From Phaeosaccion multiseriatum (Eukaryota; Protista; Ochrophyta, other classes), in assembly GCA_965112735.1 (NCBI GenBank), contig OZ218963.1, positions 620,001 through 684,000 of the forward strand: a stretch of 64,000 bases of DNA, in the 5' to 3' direction. Below, piece after piece: positions 9 to 64,000 of this stretch. The notes beneath the pieces were generated by a model that saw nothing but the letters and a program-made list of their open reading frames with translations, did no database searches and had not been told where the DNA came from. Position numbers and translations under genes: made by a program. How positions within the stretch are numbered: position 1 is the stretch's first letter; each line of letters starts with the position of its first letter.

Positions 9-3000
9 CTGTCCGTCCGTGATGGAAATCACGTTGGTGGGGATGTAGGCGGACACATCTCCTGCCTGCGTCTCAATGATGGGCAGGGCGGTGAGAGAGC
101 CGTTACCAGCCATCTCTCCCATCTTGGCCGCTCGCTCCAGGAGGCGAGAGTGCAGGTAGAACACGTCACCGGGGTAGGCCTAAGGGGAGTAACAGGAGCA
201 AGTCAGGTGCGTGGGTGGGTGGGTGGTTGGTTGGTTGGTTGGGGAGTAAGAGAAGCAAGTCAGGGGGATGGGTGGGTGCGGGTGTGGATAGAGGTAAAGG
301 GGGTGGGTGGGGGGTGGGGGGGGGGTGGAAGAGAAAGCAAGCGCAAAGAAGGAAACCGTTTTTAAAACCGTTTCTTTTTGCATTGGCACGCACCTCACGT
401 CCGGGGGGGCGACGCAGCAGCAGAGACATCTGACGGTAGGCAACGGCCTGCTTGGAGCTGAGGAGGGAATATATACATATACAAATAATAATAATAATAA
501 TAATATATGTATGTATGAGGGGAAGGGAGGGAGGGAGGGACGGGTCAGTAATTCATGCAGCTGTATCTGAGCTGCTCTGAGATGGAACACACACACACAC
601 ACACACACCAACGAAATATTATCCAATTCCCGAAAACGATCCAACATATCCAATCACCCACGAAAATTAATGCAAAATATCCGATTACCCAAGAACTACA
701 ACTACAAAAGTATCCAATTCAAAGCCAAATCCAAACTGCCATGACTCACAGATCGTCGTAGAAGATGACGGCATGCTGTCCGTTGTCTCGGAAGTACTCT
801 CCGATGGCGGCGCCGGTGTACGGGGCGAGGAACTGCAGAGGGGCCGCATCAGAGGCGGTGGCCGCAACGATGCACGTGTGGCCCATGGCATCGGCCTTGT
901 CCAGAGCTCCAACCAGTTGGGCGATGGTGGAGCGCTGGTGAGTGAGGTGAGGTAAGGTGAGGAGAGAGACCGAACGGGGGGTGAAGGGGTGAAGTGAGTG
1001 ATCCAACAAGTTAAGCGATGGTGGAGCGCTGGTGAGGTGAGGTGAGGTAAGATGAGGAAAGAGAAAGAGATAAAAAGGGAAAAGGGGTGAAGGTTGAGTG
1101 TTGTAAGGGGGGGGGTACATGCAGTCAGGGCATTCGCTGTTTGTTTGGGAACCAAACTCAGTCCCAAAGTTGTACACCGTCGGTTCATTGTTTCGTCAAC
1201 AAGGTAGGACTGTGGCACGCACACTCACGGCACACTCTCTCTCCCTCACACACACACACACAGGGTCCCTCACCTTCTGTCCGACTCCGACGTAGACGCA
1301 CTTGAGCATGTCATCCCCCTTGGTCTTCTGGTTGATGATGGTGTCGAGGCAAATGGCAGTCTGCAAGCGGAGGGGCGATAAGGGGGCGCAAAAGCAACAT
1401 CAGCAAAAATAAAGAAATAAATATTAAATAAATAAATACAACAACGATTTTATCATGTTCTGCACACTTGTTGTACCCACAGGAAAAGAAAAAGCAGAGC
1501 AGAAGCGCACAACCGAAGGGCCATCACGGCACAAGAACAACTACACTACACTACACCACACACGCCAACTTAAAACTGACCCTCTCTCTCATTATCCGTA
1601 ATACTTGCCCTCGACACACGCACGCACACACGCGCACACACAGAGGCACACCACGAGAGTCTTCAGTTGATTCCTATAAGTGAAAGGAAAGAAAAGGAAA
1701 CTCCCTTCCCTCCCCCTCCTCCTCCTCCTCCTCCTCCTCCTCCTGTTGCTTACCTTGCCCGTCTGCCTGTCGCCAATGACAAGCTCTCGCTGTCCTCGTC
1801 CAATGGGGATGAGAGCGTCGACAGCCTTGAGTCCGGTCTGCACGGGCTCGTGCACCGAGCGGCGGGGGATGATACCGGGGGCCTTCACCTGTTGGTGATA
1901 CAGAGGGAGGGAGGGAGGGAGTGAAGGGAAGGGAGAGAGGGACGGAATGAGGGAGTGAGGGGGGAGGGGAGGGAGGGAGGGAGGGAGGGAGGGAAGGAGA
2001 TGAGAACGAATGCGCGGTATGAGTGCTCGAGAGGGGAGAGAAGCAAAGTCACTCCATCCACTCACACCAAGTACGACACACCGCGGTAGAAATTAAACAC
2101 AAGTCATGCAAAGTCAATGAGGCCTAAACCTCCGAAGGCCTCCGAAGGCCTCCAAGGAGTGCGTGAGGGGGGCTCTAGCAGGAGGAGGAGGACGATTGTC
2201 GATCATATACTCCTCAACAATATTTCCATGTTCGCTTCGCTCTCCTCTCTCTCTTCTCCATTCCTTCTTCCAAAGCACACACACACACACACACACACAC
2301 ACACACACACACACGCCACACGAACGAACCTCGCAACGGGATCGCAGGTCGGAGTCAATCTTCCCCATGCCATCAATGGGCTCTCCAAGTCCATCCACCA
2401 CCCTTCCCAACAGGGCATCTCCGACAGGCACATCGACAATGGAGCCCGTGCGCTTCACCATGTCCCCCTCCAGAATGTCTCGGTCGTCGCCAAAGATGAC
2501 CACTCCGACGTTGGAGTCTTCGAGGTTGAGCGCCATGCCTCTGAGGCCGCAGGCGAACACAACCATCTCTCCGGCCTGTTGCATTGCATCGTACCGTATC
2601 ACCAACGAGTGTATGTGTGTGTGTGTATGTGTGTGTGTCCGTAAGGAGGGGTGGAGGGGTGGATGGATGGATGAGAATGGCATCAAGGGAGGCAAGGGAC
2701 GGGCGGGGGGGGGGGGGGGATTGGCCAGGTTGATCGTTCAGGAAGGGTAGTTTCCTGTGGGTATACAGACGGACAGCAATCCCTCTCATTCTTGTCCATG
2801 AGGCAAACAACGCACGCACAGGACTGGGGATAGGGAGGCGTGCATCATCCTCACGGAACGGAAGTGTGTGAGGTCCCTCTTGTACTCTGAGGGGGTGCTG
2901 CTCACACACACTTGTCGCCCAACGCACTGCGAAAGCCGTGCCAAGGTTGCACACAACTTCTCGCAGGAAGGGATGTCCTCTCTCCATCCCAGTGTGCCAC

Positions 3001-62200: not shown

Positions 62201-64000
62201 AACAACAACATCAACAACAACAACATCAACAACATCAACAACAACAACAACATCAACAACAACAACAACATCAACAACAACAACAACAACAACATCAACA
62301 ACAACAACAACAACAACAACAACAACAACATCAACAACAACAACAACAACAACAACAACAACAACATCAACAACAACAACAACAACAACAACAACAACAA
62401 CAACATCAACAACAACAACAACAGCAACAACAACAACAACAACAACCCACCTGATCCTGTTCGTAGTCGGAGCGGACAACGTCACTGAGCACTCTCCGTG
62501 GTTGCTCTCTTCTCTTCTCGAGCTTCTGCGCGTTCTCTAGACGAGCCACCTGAAACTCAAACCGATCAAGAAGGGAACGACGAGCAAGGGTGAATTCGTG
62601 AGCAGTGGGGCTGAGAAAGACGTAACAACAAATTTACGCGGCGCGAAAAAAAAAAGAGCAAAAACGTTTCTCCCGCTTCCCATCCACCCCTCACCCACCC
62701 ACCCACTCACTCACCCACCCACCCACCCCCCCCTCCTCCTCCTCCTCCTCCTCCTCCTCCTCCTCACCTTGTTGTTCCAAAGCCGTCCCTTCTTCGTATA
62801 CTCTTTCGCCAAATCCTCCCACCGCTTTCGCAGTCCGTGCTTCCTCTTCCGCACCACCTTGGTCACCAGAGGCCGCATCAATCTATGTAACGCCTCCCTC
62901 GCCCTCCACCCCGGGGACAGGAACGGCTCTTCATAAGCACCACAGATGGGCGACGCAGTAGCACCACCAACTGCTACCAAGCTCTCGTTTGGCAACAAGC
63001 TTGAGCTCTCACACTGCCTCTCGTCGTGCTGGTCGTGTTGGTAGTTTAACTGTGAAAGCTCAGCCTGTGCGGACGCCGCCGCCAGCCTGTTCTTCAGCAA
63101 CAGCCCTCTAACGTTGGCCATCCCTGTGCTCGTCAAGACGCTTACTCTGGGCCGTTTCTTACGGCGCTGCTGTATCACCAACTGCTGCTGCTGGTGCTGT
63201 TGCTGCTGCTCCAGCTGCTTGCCCTGCCCCTGCTCCCCGTTGGCGCCATCACCCCCGCCCCTCTTCTCGCCGCCATCGCCAGCCCCTGTTGCCGCCGCCG
63301 CCGCCGCCGCCGCCGCTGCCTCCTTCTCCTCGAAGCCTTCATCACCGCCCTCGGCCTCATGGACAGAATCGGTTAGCTCCAAGAAGTGGGGCAACAACAA
63401 CCCCAAGCCACCGCCGCTGTACACCCCAAGCTTTCCAAACTCCCTCTCCTCCTCCTCCCTTCGACACATTTCTCGATGGAGTTTCTCGGACCTCTCGACA
63501 CGGCGTACGACGGCTTCCAGATGGTCTGTTGTGTGTGCTAGTGCGACGCTGAGCTGTTCCACAGAAGGTAGGAGCAGTGAGCCCCCCCTTGCCTTCCCTC
63601 CCTTCCTCCCTCCCCCTTCCCTTCCCTCACCACTCTCCCCTCCCTTCCCACCATCTCCGTCATTACTCTTCATACTACTACTGCTCCTCTCCTCCTCCCC
63701 CTCCTTCTCCGCCTCCTCCTCCTCCTCCTCCTCCTCCTCGGTAAGGGCATGATCTCCTGCTCCCATCAAAGCCGTTTCGAGCCGAGAAGAATAGGCCCCC
63801 GGCAGGCGGCGCTTCCTGGACACCCCTCGGCAGAAGCGAATCACCGCTCCTGCGTCCTTGACGTCCTTGGGCGAAGTCATGAGGCTACTCACCGTTACAG
63901 CCTTCTGCCTCTTCCTTTCCCTTTCCAGTCTCTCCGCTTCCTCCGCTGCTTGCTCCGCTTCAAGCAGTGCTGCTTGTGCCGCTGCTCGCTCGGCCAGCTC
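56271..64000 (-). CDS. NCoR/SMRT/Snt1-like double-SANT (Myb) corepressor-type protein, 5'-partial. Exons >64000-62768, 62549-62451, 61818-61519, 61243-61174, 60885-60622, 60240-56271
   Basis: SANT1 NPWTDMEKCIYLDKFLAYPKDFGRIARFLRNKSAQDVVRFYYDSKHVIDYK. SANT2 KWTNKEKDMFMDTFSLLGKDWNALAGKIRSKTPAQIKNYYQNYK. Upstream ..DVVRSDYEQDQLL.. block and a long Q/H/G/E-rich tail. Confidence 0.88.
61895..62446 (+). repeat. (AAC)n array with ATC/AGC interruptions, intronic in the SANT gene
   Basis: Direct inspection. Confidence 0.95.

What the first reader, a model, noticed from the sequence alone, without database searches (positions are those of the whole stretch)
1889..63182. Hyper-abundant 11-mer GTATCACCAAC tied to splice sites: candidate undescribed cis-element system
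Seen: 28 exact copies on both strands plus about 11 near-matches, touching all nine genes (only a partial copy in the PH-like gene). Uniform expectation is 2x64000/4^11, about 0.03, so roughly 900-fold enrichment for a word that is not a simple repeat. Placement is non-random. Donor-proximal copies start at intron position +8/+9 and always read GTTGGTGATAC on the sense strand (donors at 11653, 14914, 15299, 16543, 24465(-), 53906(-)). Many other copies form or abut acceptors (1889, 11549, 16431, 21077, 23764, 36683, 40389, 41423, 52085, 53189). The extended form CTGT-ATCACCA-ACAG is an interrupted palindrome ending in CAG on both strands, so either orientation can supply a 3' splice site (1889 and 53189 versus 21077). 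Inference: a lineage-specific splicing enhancer, a DNA-binding or chromatin landmark at exon edges, or the footprint of an intron-generating element. I do not recognise it as a described motif.
Basis: partly seen in the sequence, partly recalled or inferred. Interest (0 to 1): 0.92.

Follow-up and report, generated by a model that had tools for sequence, protein, structure and literature searches.

The report
Tiny repeated DNA word at intron ends
A 13-letter DNA word occurs about once every 2 kb in this microsatellite-packed algal genome, at intron ends, in coding repeats and in both directions; it looks like the inserted end-piece of an undescribed intron-forming mobile element rather than a splicing signal.

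Summary
There are 28 exact copies of GTATCACCAAC in 64 kb, against about 0.01-0.1 expected, plus a small tail of decayed copies. The splice-site placements I could test against homologous proteins are correct.

The real core is the 13-mer GTTGGTGATACAG. It occurs in four contexts:
- A: a 26-nt word beginning with the donor GTGAGTGT, which puts the core at intron position +9.
- C: a pyrimidine repeat followed by CTGTATCACCAAC, with the acceptor AG immediately after it.
- D: a CA repeat followed by the core, close to an acceptor, in the opposite orientation to C.
- B: TGCT + 11-mer + TGCTG inside CAG/CTG-type repeats, lying in long ORFs in three reading frames and on both strands.

No similarity extends beyond about 31 nt. 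Ten of the 28 copies carry a 4-nt direct repeat at an exact 15-nt period (1.5 expected), and one solo 26-mer is flanked by ATGCA. One intron is closed by an inverted pair of cores.

Both orientations occur at acceptors and in ORFs, which argues against an RNA-level signal. My best reading (0.45) is that these are short inserted words, the ends of a microsatellite-armed, introner-like mobile system. No RNA data, transposase or empty site was obtained. Earlier readers of this scan, and one follow-up agent, noted the same word in other windows of this genome.

The parts
1891..1901 (-). Type C copy. (CCCT)n + CTGTATCACCAAC, with the acceptor AG of an ATP synthase alpha intron (gene on - strand) immediately after it.
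   Evidence: The exon [10 protein letters not shown]... starts right after the AG. The upstream exon aligns to solved ATP synthase alpha chains.
2596..2606 (+). Type D copy. The sense strand reads (CA)n..GTTGGTGATAC, 21-31 nt upstream of the ATP synthase alpha acceptor at 2576.
11661..11671 (-). Type A copy at +9 of villin donor 11653. It is followed by a triplicated GATACAGAGG-like 10-mer and then (AGGG)n.
14555..14580 (+). Solo 26-nt A-word, antisense, in the middle of villin intron 14259-14787. It is flanked by the 5-nt direct repeat ATGCA on each side (14550-14554 and 14581-14585), just outside this range, and has no adjacent microsatellite.
14914..15091 (+). Villin intron carrying both orientations: an A-word at +9 (14922-14932) and a GTATCACCAAC copy (15044-15054) flanked by TGCC/TGCC. 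It has (AGGG)n and (CCCT)n arms.
15307..15317 (-). Type A copy at +9 of villin donor 15299.
16431..16441 (+). Copy ending 8 nt before villin acceptor 16449. A degenerate copy (CATCGCCAAC) lies just upstream.
16551..16561 (-). Type A copy at +9 of villin donor 16543.
18282..18292 (+). Type B copy inside a CTG repeat, in a villin intron about 50-60 nt upstream of an inferred acceptor.
21079..21089 (+). On the - strand this reads (CA)nCCTGTTGGTGATACAG| followed by an ORF-like exon. It is an inferred acceptor made from the other end of the word.
   Evidence: inference only.
24448..24458 (+). A-like copy at +8 of an inferred donor at 24465 (- strand), followed by (AGG)n.
36683..36693 (-). Type D copy. 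(CA)n + GTTGGTGATAC + ACAG| just before the EF-hand ORF at 36691-38769.
37372..37382 (+). Copy inside the 693-codon EF-hand ORF (translated VSPT), next to (GGT)n. A one-mismatch inverted partner lies at 37318.
40389..40399 (+). Copy after (CCT)n, followed by a 15-nt tandem degenerate copy (GGACCACCAACTGCT). Its splice role was not tested.
41423..41433 (+). Copy after a CCT-rich tract. Its context is unresolved.
46267..46277 (-). Type B copy in a 770-codon ORF (translated QQLVIQQ).
46926..47027 (-). Tandem array built from the 15-nt unit GTATCACCAACTGCT alternating with a 2-mismatch variant. It holds three exact copies (46934, 46964, 46997) and lies in-frame in the same ORF (translated VGDT).
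51328..51353 (+). 26-nt A-word with one substitution, flanked by TTG on both sides. It is a possible donor for the - strand gene.
52132..52142 (+). Type D copy embedded in (GT)n, within an intron of the - strand sugar-transporter-like gene.
53189..53906 (-). Intron bounded by an inverted pair of the 13-mer: GTTAGTGG + GTTGGTGATACAG ... CTGTATCACCAAC + AG. It has a purine-rich 5' arm and a pyrimidine-rich 3' arm.
   Evidence: In the RNA fold the two copies pair at the base of one long stem, leaving 8 nt and 2 nt free (z = -3.9).
58100..58110 (+). Type B copy in the 1400-codon Myb/SANT ORF (- strand), translated QQLVIQQ.
58876..58886 (-). Copy in the same ORF, 25 codons after the Pfam Myb domain, in the opposite orientation (translated GVSPTG). 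It is flanked by TGGT/TGGT.
59227..59237 (-). Type B copy in the same ORF (translated AVSPTA), flanked by TGCT/TGCT.
63172..63182 (+). Type B copy in the N-CoR-like ORF on the - strand (translated QQLVIQQ).

Best explanation
The 11-mer is the constant core (13-mer GTTGGTGATACAG) of a family of very short inserted DNA words. I read them as the recognised ends of a non-autonomous, microsatellite-armed, introner-like mobile system.

In its fullest form, an element has inverted copies of the core at its two ends, a purine-rich repeat arm next to one copy, and the complementary pyrimidine-rich arm next to the other. Because the element is an inverted repeat, it reads the same way in either orientation: donor-proximal core plus G-rich arm at the 5' end, and polypyrimidine arm plus core plus AG at the 3' end. 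It could therefore be spliced out whichever way it inserted.

Most copies are single ends or bare cores, 11 to 26 nt long. They are inserted with a staggered cut that leaves a 3-5-nt duplication. They sit preferentially at or inside microsatellites, including CAG/GCT/GGT coding repeats, where a 15-nt (five-codon) addition is tolerated.

Shown: the copy number, the four contexts, the splice placement in two genes, the flanking repeats, the inverted pair, and the absence of longer homology.

Inferred: mobility, the enzyme, the direction of causality (element first or intron first), and that ORF-internal copies are retained in mRNA.
For: Abundance and decay. There are 28 exact copies against 0.01-0.1 expected. 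The ratio of 8 one-mismatch to 28 exact copies suggests roughly 2-3% divergence, as for a young repeat family rather than a fixed signal (estimate mine).

Short conserved words. A self-blastn of the window finds motif-centred matches of only 24-31 nt between unrelated loci. The A-word begins exactly at the intron's first base in four homology-validated villin donors. The same 26-mer also occurs as an antisense solo copy flanked by ATGCA, and another copy is flanked by TTG.

Flanking direct repeats. Ten of 28 copies have a 4-nt direct repeat at exactly a 15-nt period, against 1.5 expected from random windows of the same sequence. None is found at periods 14 or 16. The repeats vary in sequence (TGCT, TGCC, TGGT), as target duplications do.

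Both orientations in coding sequence. The word occurs in both orientations and in three of the five stop-free reading frames inside one 1400-codon ORF. I saw no ORF-internal copy read in its stop-containing frame.

Inverted pair. An inverted pair closes intron 53189-53906 and pairs at the base of the folded stem.

Microsatellite association. Twelve of 28 copies lie within 8 nt of a perfect microsatellite, against about 10% of random non-repeat positions.

Lineage-specific introns. None of the 11 mapped villin introns shares an exact position with the 22 introns of starfish advillin; the nearest is one codon away. Ten of 11 upstream exons end in AG, ten of 11 downstream exons start with G, and 9 of 11 introns are phase 0. 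This is compatible with lineage-specific intron gain.

Published screens would have missed it. The published introner screen deliberately discards low-complexity families, so an element with microsatellite arms would not have been found (PMC9860276).
Against: - No terminal target duplication is visible around the two introns that carry both ends.
- Only 2 of about 12 motif-bearing introns have both ends.
- Type D copies put the core next to a CA repeat in an orientation the foldback model does not predict.
- An 11-nt insert is far shorter than any known transposon and has no inverted ends of its own.
- No transposase was found among the ORFs scanned, and no first-stage note reports an autonomous element with these ends.
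- GTGAGTGT is also the donor consensus of motif-free introns here. The +9 placement could therefore reflect insertion at the edge of a pre-existing (AGGG)n tract rather than intron creation.
- No empty site, polymorphism or RNA evidence was obtained.
Confidence: 0.45

Rival explanations
1. A self-reinforcing repair product. The word is copied into double-strand breaks at fragile microsatellites by microhomology-mediated or templated end joining, using other copies as template. No dedicated transposase is involved. Its ends (GT.., ..AC, ..CAG) share microhomology with GT, CA, CAG and AGGG repeats. Splice-site association arises because microsatellite edges lie next to splice sites in this genome's introns.
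For: - Copies sit at microsatellite edges or inside microsatellites.
- The conserved units are only 11-26 nt long.
- Junctions overlap the repeat unit: CAG|CAG, ACAG|AGGG, GTGT|GTTGG.
- The window is 21.6% perfect microsatellite.
- Local tandem growth from the word is visible at 11661, 40389 and 46926-47027.
Against: - It does not explain why this one word alone is amplified. Only one other dispersed non-microsatellite word exists in the window.
- It does not explain the exact 15-nt period with variable 4-nt repeats.
- It does not explain the fixed 26-nt boundaries of the A-word.
Confidence: 0.2
2. A binding site for a sequence-specific double-stranded-DNA protein, kept by selection. Candidates would be a Myb/SANT-type or multi-zinc-finger factor that marks gene bodies or exon edges, for chromatin, replication or recombination.
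For: - The ratio of exact to degenerate copies is high.
- The word works in both orientations and in exons, introns and, according to a follow-up note on another window, spacer DNA.
- From memory, the word contains CAACTG and ACCAAC, which resemble Myb-type sites. This was not tested.
Against: - Selection on a site does not predict the 8-10 nt of subtype-specific conserved flank, the 15-nt-period flanking repeats, or the tandem arrays of the unit.
- The distribution is patchy: 8 copies in one gene and none over a 12-kb stretch of three genes.
- A density of one site per 2.3 kb is very high for a landmark.
Confidence: 0.12
3. An RNA-level splicing element. The word near donors and its complement near acceptors either base-pair to clamp the slippery (AGGG)n/(CCCU)n stem in register, or are bound by a lineage-specific splicing factor or snRNA.
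For: - All seven donor-proximal copies have the same orientation and sit at +8/+9.
- In intron 53189-53906 the two copies pair at the stem base, next to both splice sites.
- Copies are enriched within 50 nt of intron ends.
- Complementary-repeat introns that aid splicing are, from memory, known in teleost fish.
Against: - Most motif-bearing introns have only one copy.
- Both orientations occur at acceptors, type C versus type D.
- Both orientations occur inside one ORF.
- In intron 14914-15091 the two copies do not pair in the predicted fold.
- The fixed +9 position is equally explained by descent from one 26-nt word.
- No Rfam family matches anywhere in the window.
Confidence: 0.1
4. An assembly, adapter or base-calling artefact.
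For: The identity of the copies is unusually uniform, and the assembly is recent. The runs that hold the window may be the ones it was assembled from.
Against: - One copy supplies the acceptor of a conserved ATP synthase alpha exon.
- Copies keep long ORFs open.
- Decayed variants and tandem derivatives exist.
- Runs from two different samples hold words of the window.
Confidence: 0.02

Closest known systems
Introners (transposon-derived intron families of Micromonas, Aureococcus, dinoflagellates and others; PMC9860276, PMC12130899)
   Same: Many introns at unrelated, lineage-specific positions share sequence that reaches the splice boundary. Inverted ends are present in some. The splice signals are carried by the repeated unit. 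The host is aquatic and intron-rich.
   Different: The shared sequence is only 13-31 nt at one end. The interior is fast-evolving microsatellite, and the published screen filters out such families. No terminal duplication was found around the complete units. A third of the copies are bare cores inside coding repeats rather than introns.
Amoebophrya introner elements (PMC7789003)
   Same: There, introns are recognisable only by an 8-20-nt inverted repeat joining the two intron ends into a hairpin, with 3-5-nt direct repeats at the boundaries. No transposase has been identified.
   Different: Those introns are mostly non-canonical and have no family-specific repeat motif. Here the splice sites are canonical GT-AG and a single word is shared by all copies.
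Foldback elements and microsatellite-associated or microsatellite-targeting MITEs (e.g. PMC4079207, PMC8449440, PMC5907723, PMC4486113; listed and not read)
   Same: Arms are built of short tandem repeats with a conserved terminal sequence. The elements are associated with microsatellites, or insert into them.
   Different: Those elements are 100 bp or longer, with clear inverted ends and defined target duplications. Here most copies are solo words of 11-26 nt.
mariner-family inverted terminal repeats (Himar1 ACAGGTTGGCTGATAAG, Hsmar1 AGGTTGGTGCAAAAG; both strings confirmed in print)
   Same: They share GTTGG(N)TGATA or GTTGGTG, a few bases from the element end.
   Different: The resemblance covers only 10-13 nt and needs gaps. 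There is no TA target duplication, no 28-30-nt repeat and no transposase. This is a lead, not a membership.
Bacterial dispersed short words (DNA uptake sequences, REP elements), from established knowledge
   Same: They are exact 10-12-mers at about one per 1-2 kb. They occur in both orientations, inside coding regions in tolerated frames, and sometimes as inverted pairs.
   Different: The host here is a eukaryote and no uptake or REP-transposase system is known. This is an analogy only.

Membership tests
Introner | Several introns at non-homologous positions share sequence that extends to near both splice boundaries. | tested here: inconclusive
   Seven donor ends share 21-26 nt. Three or four acceptor ends share about 15 nt. 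The interiors are microsatellite and cannot be aligned.
Introner | The introns sit at lineage-specific (recently gained) positions. | tested here: inconclusive
   None of 11 villin intron positions matches starfish advillin exactly. The same holds for the motif-free introns, and only one distant outgroup was compared.
Introner / MITE | Terminal inverted repeats at both ends of the unit. | tested here: inconclusive
   Present in introns 53189-53906 and 14914-15091. Absent from the other motif-bearing introns.
Introner / MITE | A target-site duplication flanks the whole unit. | tested here: not met
   No matching flanks surround the two complete units. Short direct repeats flank solo words only.
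Introner / MITE | A cognate autonomous element or transposase, or presence/absence polymorphism. | not testable with these tools
   Only one window is readable. Pfam finds no transposase in nine ORFs. Metagenome and viral scans found nothing related.
Intronic or exonic splicing enhancer | Strand-specific occurrence relative to transcription. | tested here: not met
   Both orientations occur at acceptors (1891 and 53191 versus 2596, 21079 and 36683) and inside one ORF (58100 versus 58876 and 59227).
Structured introns with complementary end repeats (teleost AC/GT type) | Complementary repeats at opposite intron ends form a stem that bridges the splice sites. | tested here: met
   The (AGGG)n and (CCCT)n arms pair, with fold z-scores of -3.5 and -3.9. 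This describes the introns in general; the word is an optional part of the stem base.
Tc1/mariner | TA target duplication and inverted ends of about 28 nt or more. | tested here: not met
   No TA flanks were seen and conservation is at most 26 nt.

The most novel reading that the evidence does not exclude
The word is a new kind of eukaryotic selfish DNA: an 11-26-bp unit that a trans-acting enzyme, or the repair machinery itself, inserts with a 4-nt staggered cut throughout the genome. It seeds or caps microsatellites, adds five-codon blocks to proteins and, because its two ends read GT... and ...CAG, supplies ready-made splice sites that let larger insertions persist as introns.
Probability: 0.2. 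Interest if true: 0.88.

Novelty: new variant of a known kind. Interest (0 to 1): 0.66.

Why it matters
How new spliceosomal introns arise is still debated. Systematic introner screens throw away low-complexity families, so a genome whose introns are built from microsatellite arms capped by one short word would have been invisible to them.

If the word marks the ends of an active element, this alga offers a system where intron gain, microsatellite birth and in-frame protein insertions can all be traced to one sequence. These could be tested with population data and RNA-seq.

If the word is instead a bound DNA landmark, or a repair-copied word, it would be an unusual eukaryotic counterpart of bacterial dispersed short repeats.

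Tried and rejected
- **More copies from outside the window.** The 21-nt A-word has no hit in metagenome contigs. 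The 20-nt B-word has six hits, each a single copy in unrelated contigs of 37-61% GC, which I read as chance. A 19-nt form has no hit in viral contigs.
- **The window's own proteins.** The 1321-aa Myb ORF has no close relative among 5.8 billion proteins. Three exact-protein look-ups found nothing. The best villin relative comes from intron-less metatranscriptome contigs. Named villin relatives are oomycete, animal and ancyromonad, so the lineage stays unknown.
- **Literature.** No paper prints the 13-mer except as a fish primer.
- **Rfam.** There is no match in the window.
- **Ideas considered from memory and dropped as untested or weak:**
  - GATACAGAG matches the U6 ACAGAGA-box region, but only when the AGGG flank is present.
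  - TGGTGATACAG could be a primer-binding site for a tRNA ending in CTGTATCACCA, but no such tRNA or LTR context was seen.
  - CACCAAC could be a branch point, but it is too close to the AG in type C.
  - A spliced-leader relic would be in the wrong position within genes.
  - Excision footprints would be variable and partly palindromic, which these copies are not.
- **AG|GT flanks as a target duplication.** This is not informative. In the 11 mapped villin introns, 10 upstream exons end in AG and 10 downstream exons start with G, whether or not the intron carries the motif.

Full report
**Observation.** GTATCACCAAC occurs 28 times in the window, 15 on the + strand and 13 on the - strand, at exactly the coordinates given. 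Dinucleotide-preserving shuffles expect 0.01 copies and a 4th-order Markov model of the window expects 0.1. One-mismatch copies number 8 (1.8 expected) and two-mismatch copies 23 (15 expected). Exact copies therefore dominate, but a real decay tail exists. Among all non-microsatellite 11-mers it is the most dispersed, with 28 copies in 20 different 1-kb bins. The strictly conserved core is the 13-mer GTTGGTGATACAG, with 19 copies. The window is 21.6% perfect microsatellite.

**Splice placement.** I mapped a villin/advillin-like gene (+ strand, about 8.8-18.9 kb) onto the best homologue found, P0003, and located 11 introns by frame-consistent GT-AG search. The donor at 11653 is supported by the tblastn alignment alone.
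- Donors at 11653, 14914, 15299 and 16543 all read GTGAGT(G/C)TGTTGGTGATACAG, with the word at +9.
- The copy at 16431 ends 8 nt before acceptor 16449.
- The degenerate copy at 11547 supplies the acceptor of the exon beginning VVFVHEE.
- In the ATP synthase alpha gene (- strand), the copy at 1891 is followed directly by the acceptor AG in front of [10 protein letters not shown]. The preceding exon aligns to solved alpha subunits.
- Five of the seven copies inside mapped introns lie within 50 nt of an intron end, against 26% expected.

Four copies (2596, 21079, 36683, 52132) place GTTGGTGATAC on the sense strand near acceptors, so the donor/acceptor polarity is not a rule.

**Anatomy.** The copies fall into four contexts.
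- **A:** GTGAGTGT + core + AGGGA, then usually (AGGG)n. This is a 26-nt word whose first base is the first base of the intron.
- **C:** (CCCT)n + CTGTATCACCAAC + AG|GT.
- **D:** (CA)n + GTTGGTGATAC, then an AG within 0-20 nt.
- **B:** TGCT + GTATCACCAAC + TGCTG inside CAG/CTG, GCT or GGT repeats.

A self-blastn of the window finds no similarity between loci longer than 24-31 nt around the word.

The A-word also occurs as a solo copy in antisense orientation in the middle of villin intron 14259-14787, with no microsatellite beside it. That copy is flanked by ATGCA on both sides. Another A-word, at 51334, is flanked by TTG.

Ten of the 28 copies have a 4-nt direct repeat immediately on both sides, giving a 15-nt period. 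Random windows of the same sequence expect 1.5, and no copy shows the equivalent repeat at period 14 or 16. The repeats are TGCT, TGCC and TGGT, and only two of the ten sit in a perfect trinucleotide run. The 15-nt unit is itself tandemly repeated at 40389-40418 and 46926-47027.

**Coding copies.** About ten copies lie inside ORFs of 429 to 1400 codons. They are read as LVIQ, VSPT or VGDT, that is, three of the five stop-free frames; I saw none read in the stop-containing frame. Within the single 1400-codon Myb/SANT ORF, both orientations occur. One copy lies 25 codons after the Pfam-supported Myb domain, in ordinary non-repetitive sequence. A caution applies: in this genome microsatellites keep ORFs open across real introns. 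For example, a 361-codon ORF spans villin introns. Exon status is therefore probable but unproven without RNA data.

**Intron architecture.** Introns here typically start with a purine-rich repeat and end with a pyrimidine-rich repeat. Intron 53189-53906 has the 13-mer at both ends in inverted orientation. In the predicted fold the two copies pair at the base of one long stem, leaving 8 nt at the donor and 2 nt at the acceptor free (z = -3.9). Intron 14914-15091 folds through its repeat arms, but its two copies do not pair with each other (z = -3.5). None of the 11 mapped villin introns shares an exact position with the 22 introns of starfish advillin, the closest being one codon off. Ten of the 11 upstream exons end in AG, ten of the 11 downstream exons start with G, and nine of the 11 introns are phase 0.

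**Interpretation.** An RNA-level signal is unlikely, because the word and its complement are used interchangeably at acceptors and in ORFs. A selected DNA-binding site explains exactness and orientation independence. It does not explain the subtype-specific conserved flanks, the 15-nt-period duplications, the tandem units or the patchy distribution. The features that fit together are short units with fixed boundaries, variable short flanking duplications, a decay series, both orientations, an inverted pair enclosing an intron, and a word that begins with a donor and ends in CAG. I therefore read the word as the inserted end-piece of an introner-like mobile system whose body is microsatellite, at confidence 0.45. 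Against this reading:
- most copies are single;
- no duplication flanks the two complete units;
- type D does not fit the foldback picture;
- no enzyme is known;
- GTGAGTGT is the general donor consensus, so A copies might be insertions at the edge of pre-existing (AGGG)n tracts.

A repair-driven copying process at fragile microsatellites is the main rival, at 0.2.

**Comparison with what is known.** The published introner screen removes low-complexity families (PMC9860276). Amoebophrya introner elements are likewise defined only by 8-20-nt inverted repeats and 3-5-nt direct repeats, but they are non-canonical and have no shared motif (PMC7789003). Mariner-family end sequences share 10-13 nt with the word (strings confirmed in print), but the TA duplication and the long inverted ends are missing here. 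No paper in the library prints the 13-mer.

**Earlier notes of this scan.** First readers on at least ten other windows of this genome noted the same word. One follow-up agent on another window described it as a 14-15-base word copied about every 3 kb into exons, introns and spacer DNA, mostly in CAG repeats, and found no known class that accounts for it. These are unchecked AI notes. I use them only as an indication that the word is genome-wide.

Noticed in passing
window 14002-14095, 19352-19445, 24190-24219, 35405-36014 and others: A second dispersed, non-microsatellite word of about 10-18 nt, usually in short tandem arrays, is about as abundant as the finding's word (22-26 copies in 7-8 different 1-kb bins).
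   Followed up: no
window 8864-18857 (villin introns), 53189-53906, 1889-2329: Introns are polarised, with a purine-rich or GT-rich repeat just after the donor and a pyrimidine-rich or CA-rich repeat before the acceptor. The two ends can therefore pair into a long stem. This holds with or without the word.
   Followed up: partly
window 8864-18857 compared with L010: None of 11 mapped villin introns shares an exact position with the 22 introns of starfish advillin. Nine of the 11 are phase 0, ten of the 11 upstream exons end in AG, and ten of the 11 downstream exons start with G. This suggests wholesale lineage-specific intron turnover.
   Followed up: partly
window 11457-11496 and 13641-13680: A 40-nt inverted repeat at 97.5% identity, 2.1 kb apart, brackets three villin exons.
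   Followed up: no
window 1-64000: Perfect microsatellites of at least 12 bp cover 21.6% of the window. Tandem Repeats Finder reports 222 rows at score 60 or more. Microsatellites keep ORFs of several hundred codons open across real introns, so ORF length is a poor guide to exons in this genome.
   Followed up: partly
window 14519-14620: The sequence on either side of the solo 26-mer at 14555-14580 looks like a diverged local duplication (ATCGAGA...CACCGA occurs twice, about 70 nt apart), and only one copy carries the word.
   Followed up: no
window 51354-51380: Directly after the A-word at 51334 there is a small palindrome, CCAAC-TT-GTTGG, followed by GTTGGTCAC. This may be a degenerate inverted copy of the core.
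   Followed up: no
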